The translations under genes and the position numbers were made by a program. DNA of 64,000 nt, from positions 12,648,001 to 12,712,000 of the forward strand of contig CM106585.1 in assembly GCA_048013815.1 (NCBI GenBank), given 5' to 3'. How positions within the stretch are numbered: the first letter of the stretch is position 1; each line of letters opens with the position of its first letter. Below, in pieces: positions 50,285-57,529 of the stretch. The notes below the pieces were generated by a model. It was not told the DNA's origin. It ran no database searches and saw only the letters and a program-made list of their open reading frames with translations. Source of the DNA: Setoptus koraiensis (Eukaryota > Animalia > Arthropoda).

Positions 50285-51994
50285 TCATCCATCTCATCAT
50301 GGTGCGCTTAGTCCTATTCTATGCAATTCTCACATGAATGTAATTGTATAATAATAATGATAATTTTGTCCCTCTCTTTATGCAACAACCTCGCCAAACA
50401 AACTCACAAGCAAAACTAATCAATAATATACTCCATCACCGACGTAACTAAACTCAAGATTCTCTCCGTCACACACTCACTGAAATGTACACATATACAT
50501 CACACAAACAAACGACACTACCAAAAACGTACAAGCTTACTAATGTATATCCGATAGAGGACCAACAATTAGATTATAATTATTATAATTTTATAATTTT
50601 AAAATTCTACTTAAACTACCACTATTATTTACAATGTAATTATCACGCAATTAACAATGTGTGAGTGTAGTTATCATCATATTGTAGGCGGCGTCTGGGA
50701 CTAGTTGTTGTCGTTGTTGGCACGACCGTGCCTGATTGTTGTTTTATTTCTCTGTTTGCAATAGTCAATTTGGTGGATGTTCAGTGGATATTTGACAACG
50801 AGTTTTTTGGATTGTCAAGAGTTGAAACGACCAAGACAGCAGCTTGTTTGGCTGAAGTATCGCTCGGCGATGGGGATTAGAACGTTGTCAGAGCTTGTTG
50901 CCGCTCGCAACAAGGTATGGAGAGATGTTGGTGTTGAAGTTGATAATGGCGTCCGTTAGTAAGAATAACTAGCTAGCTATTGTGGGATAACAGATCTATC
51001 GTTGTACCCTGTGCATGGTATGTGTGTAATAGGCCCGGTTGCGTTGGTCACTGATTATGTGAGAATTGCTGTTATTGCTGTTGCATAATAATAGTAATAA
51101 TAATAGTACAACAATAATCAATAGATATTGATGATGATGATGATAGCAAGTTTCCGCCTACAACTGAATTTGCACCGCCACCAGCACCATTGGCATTCTC
51201 ACCTATTCTCTTTATCCAGCAGTTATCTCGCTTGTTGTTGTTGTTGTTGTTGTTTGTGGTTGTGGCAATAGTCGGTTCTGGTCGCGACCGCCAGGCGTCG
51301 CATGGGTTTCACTTGACTGCTTATGCCGATGATTGACAACTGCTGGGAGCGGCGCGAGCGCCGCCACCAGTGCGCGATCCCAAGCTAGTTTGGCCAATGC
51401 TGCTCTAATGTTTACATGTCTAACGCAGGGCTCGCAGCGTTGTGAGCAGCGTCGATTCGACTCACAGCACACATACGCACGCAGTTGACAGGCTTGCTCT
51501 TGGTATAGTTGTCGTGTGTGTGTGTGTGTGTTTTTGCCCGTCTGTGTGTACTGTTTGTTTACTTTGTTAGTGCAACATAGTGTGCAGTGCAATGGCAGCA
51601 GCAGCAGCAGCACCACCACCACCGAAACACACACACACACACACAGACGCACACACACACACACAAACACACACACATAGAGGGGGGAGCAGACACACAG
51701 GCAGACAGACGGGCGCGAGTAGCGAGGAGAGCAGGAGCAGCACGAATAACTGGTAATACTGGCTACAGTGAATAGTTCGCATTGTACAACTGCGAACAGC
51801 ATAGAGAAACATACAGAGAGACGAGACAGCGACAGAGGGGAGAGAACGATTCTATTGGACAATGGGAATAGCCAGCTCGAAAATTCTCTAATTATTACCA
51901 GCTTGTGTGTGTATAATAATTCTATTATTTGTGCCCAAAAGTTCCACGAGTGTTCTAGAAGGAAAAGAACAAAAATTGTCCTTGTTCGCCACCG

Positions 51995-52002: not shown

Positions 52003-52217
52003 TACGCTCATTGGGCCCCACTCGTCCCACTCAAACAGACGCCACGGCTAGCTCAACGACGGGCGCCAACAAACGGCAATCATATCCACTTCGAACAGCC
52101 ATAGATCACACTCATTATTTGTAGTATACCAAGCATCCGCAGCAGTAGCCGCACATCGGGTTGACCACATCAAATCGCAGACACAGGCCGCTGGTCGATC
52201 GGCCACCATCAAAATTC

Positions 52218-54170
52218 ATGTCAGAACAACAGCTCAAGGAACAACAGCCCGTGGTCTATGGTGAGATTGTTATACTTGGCTACAATGGCTCGCTGCCGCA
52301 CTCAGACAAGAGCAAACGAACAAAGAGCAAATTTTCGCTCTGTAAGAGGCCCACGCCAAACGGAATCAGAAAATCCAAGCATTACATTGTTAAGCAACCT
52401 CAAGCAACCAAGGCAATACAAGACAAGGAACTGCATTCAATATCCTACACAATATCCAGGAGCCAGGCCATCATTGTTGAGTACCAGCAGGACCACGAGA
52501 CGGACATGTTTCAAATTGGACGCTCCTCGGAGAGCCCCATTGATTTTGTAGTCATTGACACTGTCAATCATTATCCTCAAAATGTAGGCAGTAGTAGCGC
52601 CAGTCAGTCGGCCACATCAGCGTCAAACGGGCAATCGGGGCAAGCGGGCGCCGCCGCCGCACCAGTAGCGGCAGCATCAGGATTAAACGGCCAACAGCAC
52701 CATCACAAACAGCACATTAATAGTGGCAGCAATCATTGTGGCAGGGAAAACAATCACGATCCGTATAGAAAACATTTTCTTGCATCTCATCACTATCATC
52801 ACAACAACAATAATCACTCAAATCATCATATATCATCATCAAGTCCAGCTCAGAGCACAATCTCAAGATTTGCCTGCAGAATATTAGTTGACAGAAAACC
52901 ACCATATACAGCCAGAATATATGCGGCCGGATTTGATTCGTCCAAGAATATTTTCTTGGGCGAAAAGGCCACCAAATGGGAACAAAACAATGAGATAGAT
53001 GGACTTACCACAAATGGTGTACTTATCATGCATCCCAAACGAGGCTATTTTGCTGAAACTAATCATGCCCACAACAACACCACCGCCACAACACCATCGG
53101 AAACAGTGAATCGATCAAATTTAGATACATCAACTACTACTAATTTAAATAACAACAAAAGTATAATAGAACAAACAGGTGATCATTCATTCAACTTTTC
53201 CAGTCATATTCCTCCAACGAATAACAATAACAAAGACAATAGTAATGTTAACCAGAACCTCGGTTACAATGATAGCCATAATTTAAATAATAATAGCAAC
53301 AACAATAGTGTCCACAACGACTCAACAAAGGCAATCAACATCACCACTGATGCTGCCAATCCATCTCAGGAAAACAATAATATTATTATTAGTGGTGCCA
53401 GACCAAATCAACTTCATGACACCAATAATAATGACAATAAGCACAATCAATTGTTAAATAACTCACCATCTTGTGGTATATGGCGAGAGGTTTCTGTCGA
53501 TGGTGGAGTCTATGCCATTAGAGAGAGTCGCTCGGCCGCTCAAAAAGGTACCAAAGTTGAAGGCGAAACCAATGTATTGCAAGATGGTACTCTCATTGAT
53601 TTATGTGGAGCAACATTGCTTTGGCGATCAATGGAAGGTCTCAGTCAATCACCAACGAAAAAGACATTAGAAAAAATGGTAGACAGGCTAAACGCATCTA
53701 GACCGCAATGCCCTGTTGGATTGAATACATTAGTGATACCTAAAAAGCCGATCTCACATAACGGCCATCATCATCGAGATCATCATCCACCACCTTATCC
53801 AGCGTGTGACCTAGGTAGCGGGCATCAGCCTTATGTCTATATTAAATGTGGCCATGTGCAGGGTTCGCATGATTGGGGAGCCACCAAACAACCAAACCAA
53901 CGAACTTGTCCAATATGCTTCTCAGTAGGACACGTAGCAAAATTAACTATGGGTATAGAGCCAAGTTTTTATGTTGATTGTAATGCGCCAACTCACGTTT
54001 TCAATCCATGCGGACATATGGCTAGCGAGAAAACAGTTGAATATTGGTCCACTGTCAAAATACCTCACGGTACTCACTTTTTTCACTCTATTTGTCCATT
54101 TTGTGCCACGCCAGTAGCCACCAATGAGTCTAAATACACAAGGCTCATATTCCAAGATTATGTTGATTGA
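52218..54170 (+). CDS. Pli: Pellino E3 ubiquitin ligase (FHA + RING-like), intronless, 650 aa from the first ATG
   Basis: YGEIVILGYNG, DMFQIGRSSESPIDFVV, STISRFACRI, ARIYAAGFDSSKNIFLGEKA, DGLTTNGVLIMHP, NVLQDGTLIDLCGATLLWR, RPQCPVGLNTL, CGHV, CPIC, CGHM, CPFC. The track starts at TTG 52161; first ATG is 52218. Confidence 0.96.
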   Translation: MSEQQLKEQQPVVYGEIVILGYNGSLPHSDKSKRTKSKFSLCKRPTPNGIRKSKHYIVKQPQATKAIQDKELHSISYTISRSQAIIVEYQQDHETDMFQIGRSSESPIDFVVIDTVNHYPQNVGSSSASQSATSASNGQSGQAGAAAAPVAAASGLNGQQHHHKQHINSGSNHCGRENNHDPYRKHFLASHHYHHNNNNHSNHHISSSSPAQSTISRFACRILVDRKPPYTARIYAAGFDSSKNIFLGEKATKWEQNNEIDGLTTNGVLIMHPKRGYFAETNHAHNNTTATTPSETVNRSNLDTSTTTNLNNNKSIIEQTGDHSFNFSSHIPPTNNNNKDNSNVNQNLGYNDSHNLNNNSNNNSVHNDSTKAINITTDAANPSQENNNIIISGARPNQLHDTNNNDNKHNQLLNNSPSCGIWREVSVDGGVYAIRESRSAAQKGTKVEGETNVLQDGTLIDLCGATLLWRSMEGLSQSPTKKTLEKMVDRLNASRPQCPVGLNTLVIPKKPISHNGHHHRDHHPPPYPACDLGSGHQPYVYIKCGHVQGSHDWGATKQPNQRTCPICFSVGHVAKLTMGIEPSFYVDCNAPTHVFNPCGHMASEKTVEYWSTVKIPHGTHFFHSICPFCATPVATNESKYTRLIFQDYVD

Positions 54171-55195: not shown

Positions 55196-55290
55196 ATGTC
55201 GCTACTGGACAAGGAAATCGCTTTAATCAAGGAAACTTGGGCACCTGTCAGCAAGGACAAAAAGAACGGAGGTGTTCTCTTGTTTAAACT
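55196..55290 (+). CDS. Globin (single-domain, hemoglobin-like), exon 1 of 2
   Basis: MSLLDKEIALIKETWAPVSKDKKNGGVLLFKL covers helices A-B with the A12 Trp. Donor CT|gtaag at the ancestral B12.2 position. Confidence 0.92.
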
Positions 55291-55390
55291 GTAAGAAGCG
55301 CCAAAAATATTGAAATATCGAATATTCATTTGAAAGTAACTCTTTTAACATTCTACGCCTTTATCGTCATCCTTATCGAATCTCCAATAG

Positions 55391-55781
55391 TTTTTTCACT
55401 AAACATCCGGAATACATTCCGTTATTTACAGATTTTCACGATTTGAATCTAGAAGATTTAGCTGATCACAAGAAACTTGTTAGCCATGCACTGAGAGTAG
55501 TGAATGCCATATCAGGAATTGTTGATATATTGGACGATGATTCTAAATCTACGATCATTATTGAAAAGTTGACTCAGCTGGCCAAGAGCCATTCGAAACG
55601 ACAAATAGATGTTGAGAAATTTCGCAATTTGGGCTCCGTTCTCATTGATTTCCTGAAACAAACCAATTCGGACCATCCAGACCAAGATGCAATGGTAAGC
55701 AGTTGGAGCAAATTGTATGGAGTCATATTGAACATTGTCGAGAAGGAAGCCAATAATGAGAGTAGTGTTGTAGATGTATAA
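55391..55781 (+). CDS. Globin, exon 2 (161 aa total)
   Basis: caatag|T TTT TTC ACT AAA CAT CCG gives FFTKHPEYIPLF (C2 Pro, CD1 Phe), distal His in KLVSHALRV, proximal His in LAKSHSKR, G5 Phe, and H-helix SWSKLY. 95+391=486 nt. Confidence 0.93.
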
Positions 55782-56164: not shown

Positions 56165-56677
56165 CTAACTGTATTGTACACACTGGTGTACCTCCTCTTC
56201 CTTTTGACAAGGTACACATTCCACAACGCAACAGAATCTAAACTTACAATTGCAAGTCTTTTTGACAATTGTCTTGGTGGTGTGTATTTTGTATCCACAA
56301 TCCGTGCATAGTCGCTCACAAGAATTTCTTTCACTTTTGCTCACTTCATTACCGTTAAGATCTTTCTTTTCCATGCTACAAAATCTGCCTAATGTGCCAT
56401 TCATGCCCAATTGCTTATTCTCGTAACAGTAGTCTGGCGATGCCTCTAAGAAGGCCAGTTTGTTTTTATCTAGGAGGCTCAATTGTTGCGACAATGCTTT
56501 TGGATGTAGCGTTGCTTGCATTGACACTGGGCCCACTTTGGCGGCCAGCCTATATTGTTTTCTTAGATAGTCAACAATTTTCGATAGATTTGCCGGCTGT
56601 TTCCAGCAGGTTTTAGTGGTGCAACTGCCCGACACACCGTGACATTTGCAGTGCTCCTTCATGGTATGACTGAAAGC
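56165..56677 (-). CDS. Wnt8: Wnt8-type ligand, exon 2 (415 aa total)
   Basis: tttag|GCT gives AFSHTMKEHCKCHGVSGSCTTKTCW, LEASPDYC, GTLGRFC, SERNSCERLCTDCG (Wnt8-specific pattern) and CNCKFRFCCVVECVPC. Confidence 0.93.
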   Translation of the reverse strand, partial: AFSHTMKEHCKCHGVSGSCTTKTCWKQPANLSKIVDYLRKQYRLAAKVGPVSMQATLHPKALSQQLSLLDKNKLAFLEASPDYCYENKQLGMNGTLGRFCSMEKKDLNGNEVSKSERNSCERLCTDCGYKIHTTKTIVKKTCNCKFRFCCVVECVPCQKEEEVHQCVQYS

Positions 56678-56794
56678 CTAAATTATTTATGAGAGAGAGA
56701 GGGAGAGAGAGCGACATAGTTATTAACACGATCTGTTGCTAGATGACTCAATGATAATTGTGAGTATAGTAGCACTAGCAGAGATAATAATTAC

Positions 56795-57529
56795 CTGTCG
56801 GCCTGCTTCGTAGTTCTGCAATATTACTGCCCGACCCTCGGCGCCATTTGGCACTATGTCGTCCAAGAACCATCTCGAGGCGGACAGACCTCTTCTGATG
56901 CATTCAACTCGTTGGGCTTGATCTCTTGAGGTGCGTTCGATGTGCGATGTCGGTTGTTCAGTGAGCATGGTCTTGGAGCAATTCTGTTGGACGGCAAGCA
57001 CCACACCAGAGGATATTATGGCCCTGACAAAGGCTGCCTCTTTATTGTTTGGCACGGACACATTGGAATTGGGTGAGAGAATATCTTCAAACATAGTCCT
57101 GGGGCAATTCCAGCGATCCCATTTAAATTTGTTGCGACACTCATCGAGTGCCCGCTGCAAACCGATGCTCATGGCGCCCTCGTAATAATAATAATCAAAG
57201 TCTGTATCGATATTGACAGCGTTTGATTGCAAGGTTAGCTCAATTTTATTTGACACATCCTCTTCCGGTTGAATGCCGGCGGTGTCCATGGGTGAGTATT
57301 GTTGTGCACCTGTGGGTACTGTTGCTGTTGTAATGTGTGTGGCGTGATTTATGTGTGTTCGTTGACGTTGGCTCACATGATGATGGGACGACGGATTTGT
57401 TGACGAGAATAAACATGTTGCATAATTTGTTGAATAATAATAGAACAATATTGTTGTGATAAATAAATAATAATAAAAACGATTAGTTGATATGGGCGAT
57501 GCGGGGCACATTTGTAGTATTGGTGTCAT
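56795..57529 (-). CDS. Wnt8: Wnt8-type ligand, exon 1 of 2
   Basis: Hydrophobic leader. ECRNKFKWDRWNCP (Wnt8 ECKxQFAWERWNCP), KEAAFVRAIISSGV, QNCS and QNYEAGRQ|gtaatt (phase 0). Confidence 0.9.

What the first reader, a model, noticed from the sequence alone, without database searches (positions are those of the whole stretch)
56870..56985. Wnt8 with the conserved CxC...WxWGGC hairpin replaced
Seen: QNCSKTMLTEQPTSHIERTSRDQAQRVECIRRGLSASRWFLD stands where Wnt8 has KNCSxGxxxxCGC...WxWGGCSDNxxFGxxxSxxFVD. The CxC pair and both Trp are gone, the two outer Cys (residues 184 and 210) remain, and the other 18 Wnt8 cysteines and the acylated Ser (CKCHGVSGSC) are intact. Known: in Wnt8 structures the outer Cys pair with the two CxC Cys, and this hairpin is among the most conserved Wnt elements, implicated in Porcupine/Wntless handling. 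Inference: the two orphaned Cys form a new disulfide closing a novel loop, so this ligand may be acylated, secreted or received differently (compare the divergent fly WntD).
Basis: partly seen in the sequence, partly recalled or inferred. Interest (0 to 1): 0.75.

Follow-up and report, generated by a model that had tools for sequence, protein, structure and literature searches.

The report
Mite Wnt8 lacking its first hairpin
A mite's only Wnt8 signalling gene has replaced one of the three "fingers" that Wnt proteins use to grip their secretion carrier with a short plain loop, yet selection has kept the gene intact in two species, so it tests naturally whether that finger is needed.

Summary
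Window 56165-57529 (minus strand) holds a two-exon Wnt gene. In an unbroken exon, the hairpin-1 ("W-loop") sequence CxC...WxWGGC is replaced by 25 polar residues between Cys184 and Cys210. Twenty of the 22 Wnt8 cysteines and the acylation motif CKCHGVSGSC are intact.

An independent assembly from a second species has the same replacement, the same intron position and the same globin neighbour. dN/dS between the two is 0.14 (exon 1), 0.06 (exon 2) and 0.22 (the new loop), at dS of about 0.8-1.0. This rules out an artefact or a recent pseudogene.

It is the genome's only Wnt8-type gene. The sister clade and Sarcoptes Wnt-8 keep CxC and (F)xWxGC but carry 28-118-residue inserts between them, so the loss is derived. 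Wnt1 and one other Wnt in this genome have also lost both tryptophans. Wntless and Porcupine orthologues are present.

AlphaFold on exon 1 alone predicts helix-loop-helix in place of the hairpin.

A new Cys184-Cys210 disulfide is plausible but untested, and so are expression and secretion. The comparison with fly WntD does not fit, because the acylated serine is kept here.

It is a new variant of a known family and moderately to highly interesting.

The parts
56795..57529 (-). Exon 1 of the Wnt8 gene (245 codons from the first ATG; ends ...NYEAGRQ before GTAAT)
   Evidence: ORF list and translation. Pfam wnt 63 bits, profile positions 23-153. Top structural hits are Wnt N-terminal domains. The start codon is tentative.
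57413..57529 (-). Putative signal peptide (MTPILQMCPASPISTNRFYYYLFITTILFYYYSTNYATC), tentative
   Evidence: Only a moderately hydrophobic core (Kyte-Doolittle 1.54 over 11 residues). No signal-peptide predictor was available. The second species' contig ends before this point.
57104..57145 (-). Conserved DECRNKFKWDRWNC block with the first Wnt8 disulfide pair (Cys131, Cys142)
   Evidence: Alignment with Wnt8 proteins and PDB Wnt8 chains.
56900..56980 (-). Replacement of hairpin 1 (W-loop): Cys184-SKTMLTEQPTSHIERTSRDQAQRVE-Cys210, with no CxC and no WxWGG
   Evidence: Conserved in L014 with one in-frame 2-codon indel. dN/dS 0.22, one-sided Fisher p=0.017. AlphaFold predicts helix, short loop, helix.
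56678..56794 (-). Intron, 117 nt, phase 0, GTAAT...TTTAG, with an in-frame stop
   Evidence: The same position in L014 holds a 131-nt GT...AG intron, and the two sequences look unrelated by eye, no alignment run. Exon 1 ends ...NYEAGRQ and exon 2 begins AFSHTMKEHCKC, which together match ...NYEAGRQAVKRTMRRKCKC in the intronless relative P0001.
56165..56677 (-). Exon 2 (170 codons plus stop): lipidated thumb, NC-linker and C-terminal cystine-knot domain, 16 cysteines
   Evidence: Pfam wnt 130 bits, profile positions 154-304. Translation. dN/dS 0.06 against L014.
56621..56650 (-). Acylation motif CKCHGVSGSC (hairpin 2); the acceptor Ser codon is at 56630-56632
   Evidence: Identical to the motif in the vertebrate-type Wnt8 rows P0010 and P0014.
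56216..56248 (-). Hairpin 3 tip CKFRFCCVVEC (tandem Cys kept; the canonical Trp is Phe)
   Evidence: The mite relatives have F or Y at this position.

Best explanation
This is the single, functional Wnt8 orthologue of an acariform mite. Other notes of this scan call the animal an eriophyoid gall or rust mite; I did not test that.

In the common ancestor of this species and at least one other, hairpin 1 (the W-loop) was replaced. The lost parts are the inner CxC cysteines of its two disulfides and the WxWGG motif, whose tryptophans plug into Wntless. In their place is a 25-residue polar segment. AlphaFold predicts that it lengthens the two flanking helices and joins them by a short loop.

The two remaining cysteines (184 and 210) most likely pair with each other, so one new staple replaces two old disulfides (inferred). 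The lipidated thumb, the NC-linker and the index finger are intact, and Porcupine and Wntless orthologues exist. The ligand is therefore most likely still palmitoleoylated, carried by Wntless through hairpins 2 and 3 only, and received by a Frizzled CRD in the usual two-site way (inferred).

The loss is the end point of a trend in mites. Other acariform Wnt8s have Phe for the first Trp and 28-118-residue inserts in this hairpin. In this genome Wnt1 and one more Wnt have also lost both tryptophans.
For: - Gene model and family.
- Wnt8 assignment: the best PDB hits are Wnt-8/8a. The nearest named proteins are cuttlefish WNT8 and Sarcoptes Wnt-8. In the tree, window+L014 (100/98) is sister to a clade of six unnamed proteins (100/97 together), and that group is next to Sarcoptes Wnt-8.
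- Only Wnt8-type locus in the 48.8-Mb assembly.
- Same replaced loop, intron position and globin neighbour in an independent contig of another species.
- Purifying selection: omega 0.14, 0.06 and 0.22 at dS 0.8-1.0.
- Derived state: the sister clade and Sarcoptes keep CxC and FxWxGC with inserts.
- Other paralogues: two are canonical, and two have lost WxW but keep CxC and the distal Cys. Halotydeus Wnt-1 is canonical.
- WLS orthologue at 330 bits with the Gly229 region identical. PORCN orthologue at 113 bits.
- AlphaFold on exon 1: pLDDT 82.5, helix 52-79, loop 80-88, helix 89-112. The top 10 fold hits are all Wnts.
- Role of hairpin 1 in WLS binding. LRP6 uses the N-terminus and NC-linker, not hairpin 1.
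Against: - No transcript or protein evidence: no spliced product was found in the protein collections.
- The signal peptide is weak and unverified.
- In human cells, W150A or W152A in Wnt3a drastically reduce surface delivery and abolish carrier-mediated release. A Wnt without the motif might therefore be poorly secreted unless the mite system differs.
- The disulfide is inferred only. The model gave no coordinates, the loop has low confidence (pLDDT about 57), and exon 1 was folded without the rest of the protein.
- Only two species show the state.
- The Wnt8-level node of the tree is weakly supported (71/65).
Confidence: 0.7

Rival explanations
1. Neofunctionalised ligand. Without hairpin 1 the protein no longer uses Wntless in the normal way. 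It might stay cell-bound, act only at short range or in an autocrine way, or act as a decoy or antagonist, so its job differs from that of a canonical Wnt8.
For: - Hairpin-1 Trp mutations drastically reduce surface delivery and abolish carrier-mediated release of Wnt3a and Wnt5a.
- The authors of that paper suggest that direct WLS-to-Frizzled transfer could still allow autocrine signalling.
- The stem branch of the window+L014 clade is long (0.52).
- Other notes of this scan report a widely remodelled Wnt pathway in this genome (unchecked).
Against: - The thumb, index finger and linker are under very strong constraint (omega 0.06).
- The acylation motif is identical to the vertebrate-type Wnt8 rows of the alignment.
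- It is the only Wnt8 in the genome.
- An earlier study found little effect of W150A on secretion or signalling.
Confidence: 0.17
2. The two leftover cysteines do not pair with each other. They stay free, pair with other cysteines, or form an intermolecular bond giving a covalent dimer.
For: - In the AlphaFold secondary structure they sit about one helical turn out of register (Cys73 and Cys99 of the exon-1 piece, with the loop at 80-88).
- Cys210 is shifted 3 residues from the canonical position.
- From my memory of MacDonald et al. 2014 (J Biol Chem), which I could not read here: single unpaired Wnt cysteines give covalent oligomers.
Against: - Both cysteines are conserved across a divergence of dS about 1.
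- The mature protein has an even number of cysteines, 20.
- All other cysteines have their canonical partners.
Confidence: 0.25
3. Decaying or unexpressed pseudogene.
For: - There is no expression evidence.
- The N-terminal region is odd, AT-rich and low in complexity.
Against: - Both exons are open in two species, with omega 0.06-0.14 (p below 1e-17).
- The GT...AG intron is kept in both species.
- The only indel in the loop is in frame.
Confidence: 0.04
4. Assembly or sequencing artefact, or an alternative exon that supplies the canonical hairpin.
For: None was found.
Against: - An independent assembly of another species has the same sequence state.
- The loop lies in the middle of one continuous exon.
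- No WxWGGC-like or CxC-like coding piece belonging to this gene exists anywhere in the window in six frames; the one regex match, at 50385-50402, lies about 6 kb away.
- There is no second Wnt8-type locus in the assembly.
Confidence: 0.02

Closest known systems
Canonical Wnt8 (Xenopus Wnt8, PDB 4F0A/8CTG; human WNT8A, PDB 7KC4)
   Same: - These are the best sequence and fold matches.
- Same helical N-terminal domain, acylation motif, NC-linker and cystine-knot C-terminal domain.
- 20 of the 22 cysteines are shared.
   Different: - Hairpin 1 is gone: no CxC, no WxWGG, no predicted beta-hairpin.
- The hairpin-3 Trp is Phe.
- There is a pre-domain of roughly 70 residues between the putative signal peptide (1-39) and the Wnt core.
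Other acariform mite Wnt8s (Sarcoptes scabiei Protein Wnt-8, P0169/P0015; unnamed clade P0001, P0003-P0007)
   Same: - They are the closest relatives in the tree.
- They share the KFKWDRWNCP, NYEAGRQ and PDYCYENKQLG blocks.
- The hairpin-3 aromatic is F or Y.
- Hairpin 1 is already atypical in them (first Trp is Phe; GG is AG, RG or QG).
   Different: - They keep both CxC cysteines and the FxWxGC end.
- They carry 28-118 extra residues between these.
- The sister clade is intronless.
Drosophila WntD (Wnt8/D; PDB 4KRR)
   Same: It is a divergent arthropod member of the Wnt8 group, and it is matched by exon 1 (E 9.5e-9).
   Different: WntD is described as not lipidated, whereas this protein keeps CKCHGVSGSC. 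WntD's own hairpin-1 sequence could not be displayed here, so that point was not compared.
Engineered hairpin-1 mutants of Wnt3a/Wnt5a (W150A, W152A; W177A, W179A)
   Same: They lose the same Wntless contacts.
   Different: The laboratory mutants keep the hairpin and its disulfides, and in one study they are secretion-defective. Here the whole element is replaced and the gene is maintained by selection.

Membership tests
Wnt family (Pfam PF00110) | Profile match above the curated cut-off | tested here: met
   63.4 bits (exon 1) and 130.3 bits (exon 2) against a cut-off of 20.3. The two matches cover profile positions 23-153 and 154-304.
Wnt family | Full set of conserved cysteines (22 in Wnt8) | tested here: not met
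   20 of 22; the CxC pair of hairpin 1 is absent.
Wnt family | WxWGG motif of hairpin 1 (Wntless interface) | tested here: not met
   Replaced by ...DQAQRVEC... There is no aromatic residue in the 25-residue loop. The motif's role is taken from PMC13434646.
Wnt family | Acylation motif CHG(x)SGSC with the acceptor serine on hairpin 2 | tested here: met
   CKCHGVSGSCTTKTCW is present and is identical in L014. Actual acylation cannot be tested here.
Wnt family | Hairpin 3 tip with an aromatic residue followed by tandem Cys-Cys | tested here: met
   FRFCC: Phe in place of Trp, as in the other mites.
Wnt family | N-terminal signal peptide (secreted protein) | tested here: inconclusive
   The hydrophobic core is only moderate. 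There was no predictor, and the start codon is not verified.
Wnt8 subfamily | Groups with Wnt8 proteins rather than with other Wnt subfamilies | tested here: met
   The best PDB matches are Wnt-8/8a. The nearest named proteins are WNT8 and Wnt-8. The tree places it with mite Wnt8 (88/92) next to cuttlefish and vertebrate-type Wnt8 rows; the deepest node is weak (71/65) and only the exon-2 region was used.
WntD-type (lipid- and Wntless-independent) ligands | Absence of the acylated serine | tested here: not met
   The serine and the whole motif are present. WntD is described as unlipidated in PMC7458405.

The most novel reading that the evidence does not exclude
In this mite lineage the hairpin-1/Wntless interface has become dispensable. 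Three of the five Wnt loci scored have lost the WxW motif. Wnt8 has gone furthest: it has deleted the whole beta-hairpin and swapped its two disulfides for one new Cys184-Cys210 staple, while remaining a lipidated, Wntless-carried, Frizzled-binding morphogen. That would make it a natural minimal Wnt. It would also bear on the published disagreement over whether hairpin 1 is essential for secretion.
Probability: 0.4. Interest if true: 0.75.

Novelty: new variant of a known kind. Interest (0 to 1): 0.6.

Why it matters
Hairpin 1 is one of the three contacts through which Wnts bind their carrier Wntless. A 2026 study found that its two tryptophans are essential for surface delivery and release of Wnt3a and Wnt5a. 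A 2021 study found little effect.

A Wnt8 that lacks the entire element, including two near-invariant disulfides, and is still under strong purifying selection is a ready-made natural experiment. It shows which parts of a Wnt can be removed, and it suggests a simplified scaffold for engineering. It also adds to signs, some from other notes of this scan, that Wnt signalling is rebuilt in these tiny-genome mites. I found no paper describing eriophyoid Wnt genes or a Wnt lacking this hairpin in the library searched.

Tried and rejected
1. Is the new loop a remnant of the relatives' long insert (TEQPT against TNQPT)? Local alignments against six inserts were no better than shuffles (best p=0.055 before correcting for 12 tests). 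Not supported.
2. Compensated frameshift. The other two frames of the loop DNA show no CxC or WxWGGC remnant (ORF list; six-frame regex). No evidence, but old events would be erased.
3. Alternative exon or second copy. None in the window or the assembly.
4. More carriers of the state. Word-based protein searches with exon 1 and exon 2, and the exhaustive representative search with exon 2 alone, gave only one close relative. Two metagenome scans found nothing.
5. Wntless co-divergence. The pocket residues M101/M103/F107 are L/Y/M, and the IHQNGGFT/Gly229 region is identical to human. There is no clear signal, as expected, because two paralogues still carry WxWGGC.
6. WntD hairpin comparison. 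The PDB alignment did not reach that region.
7. The papers of Janda 2012 and MacDonald 2014 are not held.
8. A search for relatives of this genome's Wnt1, to see whether its Trp loss is shared, returned only Halotydeus and a frog Wnt1.
9. The Atlas search with the Pellino ORF gave no taxonomic information.

Full report
**Gene model.** The minus strand of window 56165-57529 carries a two-exon Wnt gene. Exon 1 (57529-56795, 245 codons from the first ATG) ends ...NYEAGRQ. A 117-nt intron follows (56794-56678, GTAAT...TTTAG, with an in-frame stop). Exon 2 (56677-56165) begins AFSHTMKEHCKCHGVSGSC. Both exons match Pfam wnt, at 63 and 130 bits, and the two matches abut in the profile (positions 23-153 and 154-304).

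**The observation.** Between Cys184 and Cys210 lie 25 polar residues (SKTMLTEQPTSHIERTSRDQAQRVE) where Wnt8 proteins have xGxxxxCxC...WxWGG. The Wnt part has 4 cysteines in exon 1 and 16 in exon 2, so 20 of the canonical 22. The acylation motif is intact. One correction: Cys210 lies 4 residues before the conserved glycine of the next helix, not 7, so it may be the old cysteine beside a 3-residue deletion or a new one.

**Reality and selection.** The exhaustive representative search with exon 2 found one close relative, P0002 at 91% identity. Its contig L014 comes from a different sequencing run. It holds the same arrangement: exon 1 with ...QQNCSKTILTEQLYTDRTSRDQAQRIECIRRGL..., a 131-nt GT...AG intron at the same codon, exon 2, and a globin gene next door as in the window.

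- The two species are well separated (dS about 0.8-1.0), and the two intron sequences look unrelated by eye (no alignment was run).
- dN/dS is 0.14 for exon 1, 0.06 for exon 2 and 0.22 for the replaced loop.
- One-sided Fisher tests give p = 4e-18, 4e-25 and 0.017 respectively.
- The only length difference in the loop is an in-frame 2-codon indel.

An artefact, a recent pseudogene and a retained intron are therefore excluded for practical purposes. No other Wnt8-type locus exists in the 48.8-Mb, two-contig assembly. No coding piece for a canonical hairpin belonging to this gene exists in the window.

**Identity and polarity.** The best solved-structure matches are Wnt-8 and Wnt-8a. The nearest named proteins are cuttlefish WNT8 and Sarcoptes scabiei Wnt-8. 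A maximum-likelihood tree of the exon-2 region puts window+L014 (100/98) as sister to six unnamed proteins, P0001 and P0003-P0007 (100/97 together). This group sits next to Sarcoptes Wnt-8 and among Wnt8 proteins, although the deepest node is weak. All of those relatives keep CxC and FxWxGC but carry 28-118 extra residues between them. The ancestral mite state was therefore an expanded hairpin, and the state here is derived. I could not show that the new loop descends from the insert.

Other notes of this scan call the animal an eriophyoid gall or rust mite. My own data say only that it is an acariform mite with a very small genome. The nearest named relative of its Wnt1 is from Halotydeus.

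**Context in the same genome.** Five Wnt loci were scored.

- Two have a canonical hairpin 1: ...NCGC...NWNWGGC and ...DCACD...NWVWGGC.
- Wnt1 keeps CVC and the distal Cys but reads QQQQQHCGDN where Halotydeus Wnt-1 has DWEWGGC.
- A fourth keeps CGC, has an insert of about 80 residues, and ends DLPGCNHN.

So three of the five have lost the WxW motif, and only Wnt8 has also lost the disulfide cysteines. A Wntless orthologue is present: 330 bits to human WLS, with IHQNGGFT including Gly229 identical and the Met101/Met103/Phe107 positions L/Y/M. A Porcupine orthologue is also present (113 bits).

**What the lost element normally does.** In Wnt5a-WLS and Wnt3a-WLS structures the first Trp of WxWGG enters a hydrophobic cavity of the WLS luminal domain. 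The second Trp packs on TM2 and a lipid head group. In a 2026 study, W150A or W152A in Wnt3a and the matching Wnt5a mutants drastically reduce surface delivery and abolish release. A 2021 study saw little effect of W150A on secretion or signalling. In Frizzled-bound Wnts, hairpin 1 packs against the lipidated hairpin 2. LRP6 is engaged through the N-terminus and the NC-linker, not through hairpin 1. A PORCN docking study notes only that a closely apposed hairpin 1 hinders entry of hairpin 2.

**Structure.** AlphaFold2 was run on the Wnt part of exon 1 alone with an 18-row alignment. It gave mean pLDDT 82.5 and pTM 0.76. It predicts a helix through the NCS cysteine to residue 79 of the piece, a 9-residue loop of low confidence, and a helix from residue 89 through Cys99. 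In other words, it predicts a helix-loop-helix in place of the beta-hairpin. The ten best fold matches are all Wnt structures. Coordinates are not returned, so the Cys-Cys distance is unknown.

**Most likely mechanism.** Shown: a conserved, selected Wnt8 without hairpin 1; thumb, linker and index finger intact; carrier and acyltransferase orthologues present. Inferred: the two leftover cysteines form one new bond; the ligand is still acylated; it rides Wntless through hairpins 2 and 3; and it binds Frizzled as usual. The main rival (about 0.17) is that loss of the Wntless contact has changed its secretion range or its role. A pseudogene or an artefact is unlikely (0.04 and 0.02).

**Novelty.** I found no paper on eriophyoid Wnts or on a Wnt lacking this hairpin. 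Among 50 near-full-length Wnts retrieved, the only other one without CxC looks like a mis-spliced model. I rate this a new variant of a known family, with interest 0.6.

Noticed in passing
L004:1060-2133 (G000:C2:1807134-1808207): This genome's Wnt1 keeps the CxC pair and the distal Cys of hairpin 1 but reads QQQQQHCGDN where Halotydeus Wnt-1 has DWEWGGC. Both tryptophans and the GG are lost, inside a His/Gln-rich stretch.
   Followed up: partly
L012:1534-2259 (G000:C2:17004464-17005189): Another Wnt paralogue keeps CGC. It has an insert of about 80 residues in hairpin 1 and ends DLPGCNHN, with no tryptophan.
   Followed up: no
P0001, P0003, P0004, P0005, P0007, P0169: Related mite Wnt8 proteins carry 28-118-residue low-complexity inserts between CxC and FxWxGC of hairpin 1, and the first Trp is Phe. 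The hairpin tip is a hot spot for change in mites.
   Followed up: partly
P0006 / L022:30-767: A relative close to P0001 reads CKCMWPSMGANC in place of CKCHGTSGTC and TTTTGC in place of FAWAGC, so both the acylation motif and the W-loop are degenerate. The contig is cut at the 5' end. A frameshift or a decaying copy is not excluded.
   Followed up: no
window 55196-55781 (+): A two-piece globin gene lies tail-to-tail with Wnt8. The same Wnt8-globin neighbourhood is present in L014 (Pfam Globin called at L014:1679-2005).
   Followed up: partly
window 52161-54170 (+): The Pellino E3 ligase ORF (669 aa) is far longer than the 458-490-aa Pellino clusters it matches. It carries long Asn/His/Ser-rich low-complexity stretches.
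   Followed up: no
G000:C2:5875704-5877039 (L016/L017): A second, weaker WLS-like_TM (PF06664) locus sits in a 459-aa ORF with a poly-Gln run. One further matching piece contains three stop codons. It may be a TMEM181-type relative rather than a second Wntless.
   Followed up: no
window 56216-56248 (-) and relatives: The hairpin-3 tip Trp of the WCC motif is Phe here and in Sarcoptes, and Tyr in the sister clade.
   Followed up: no
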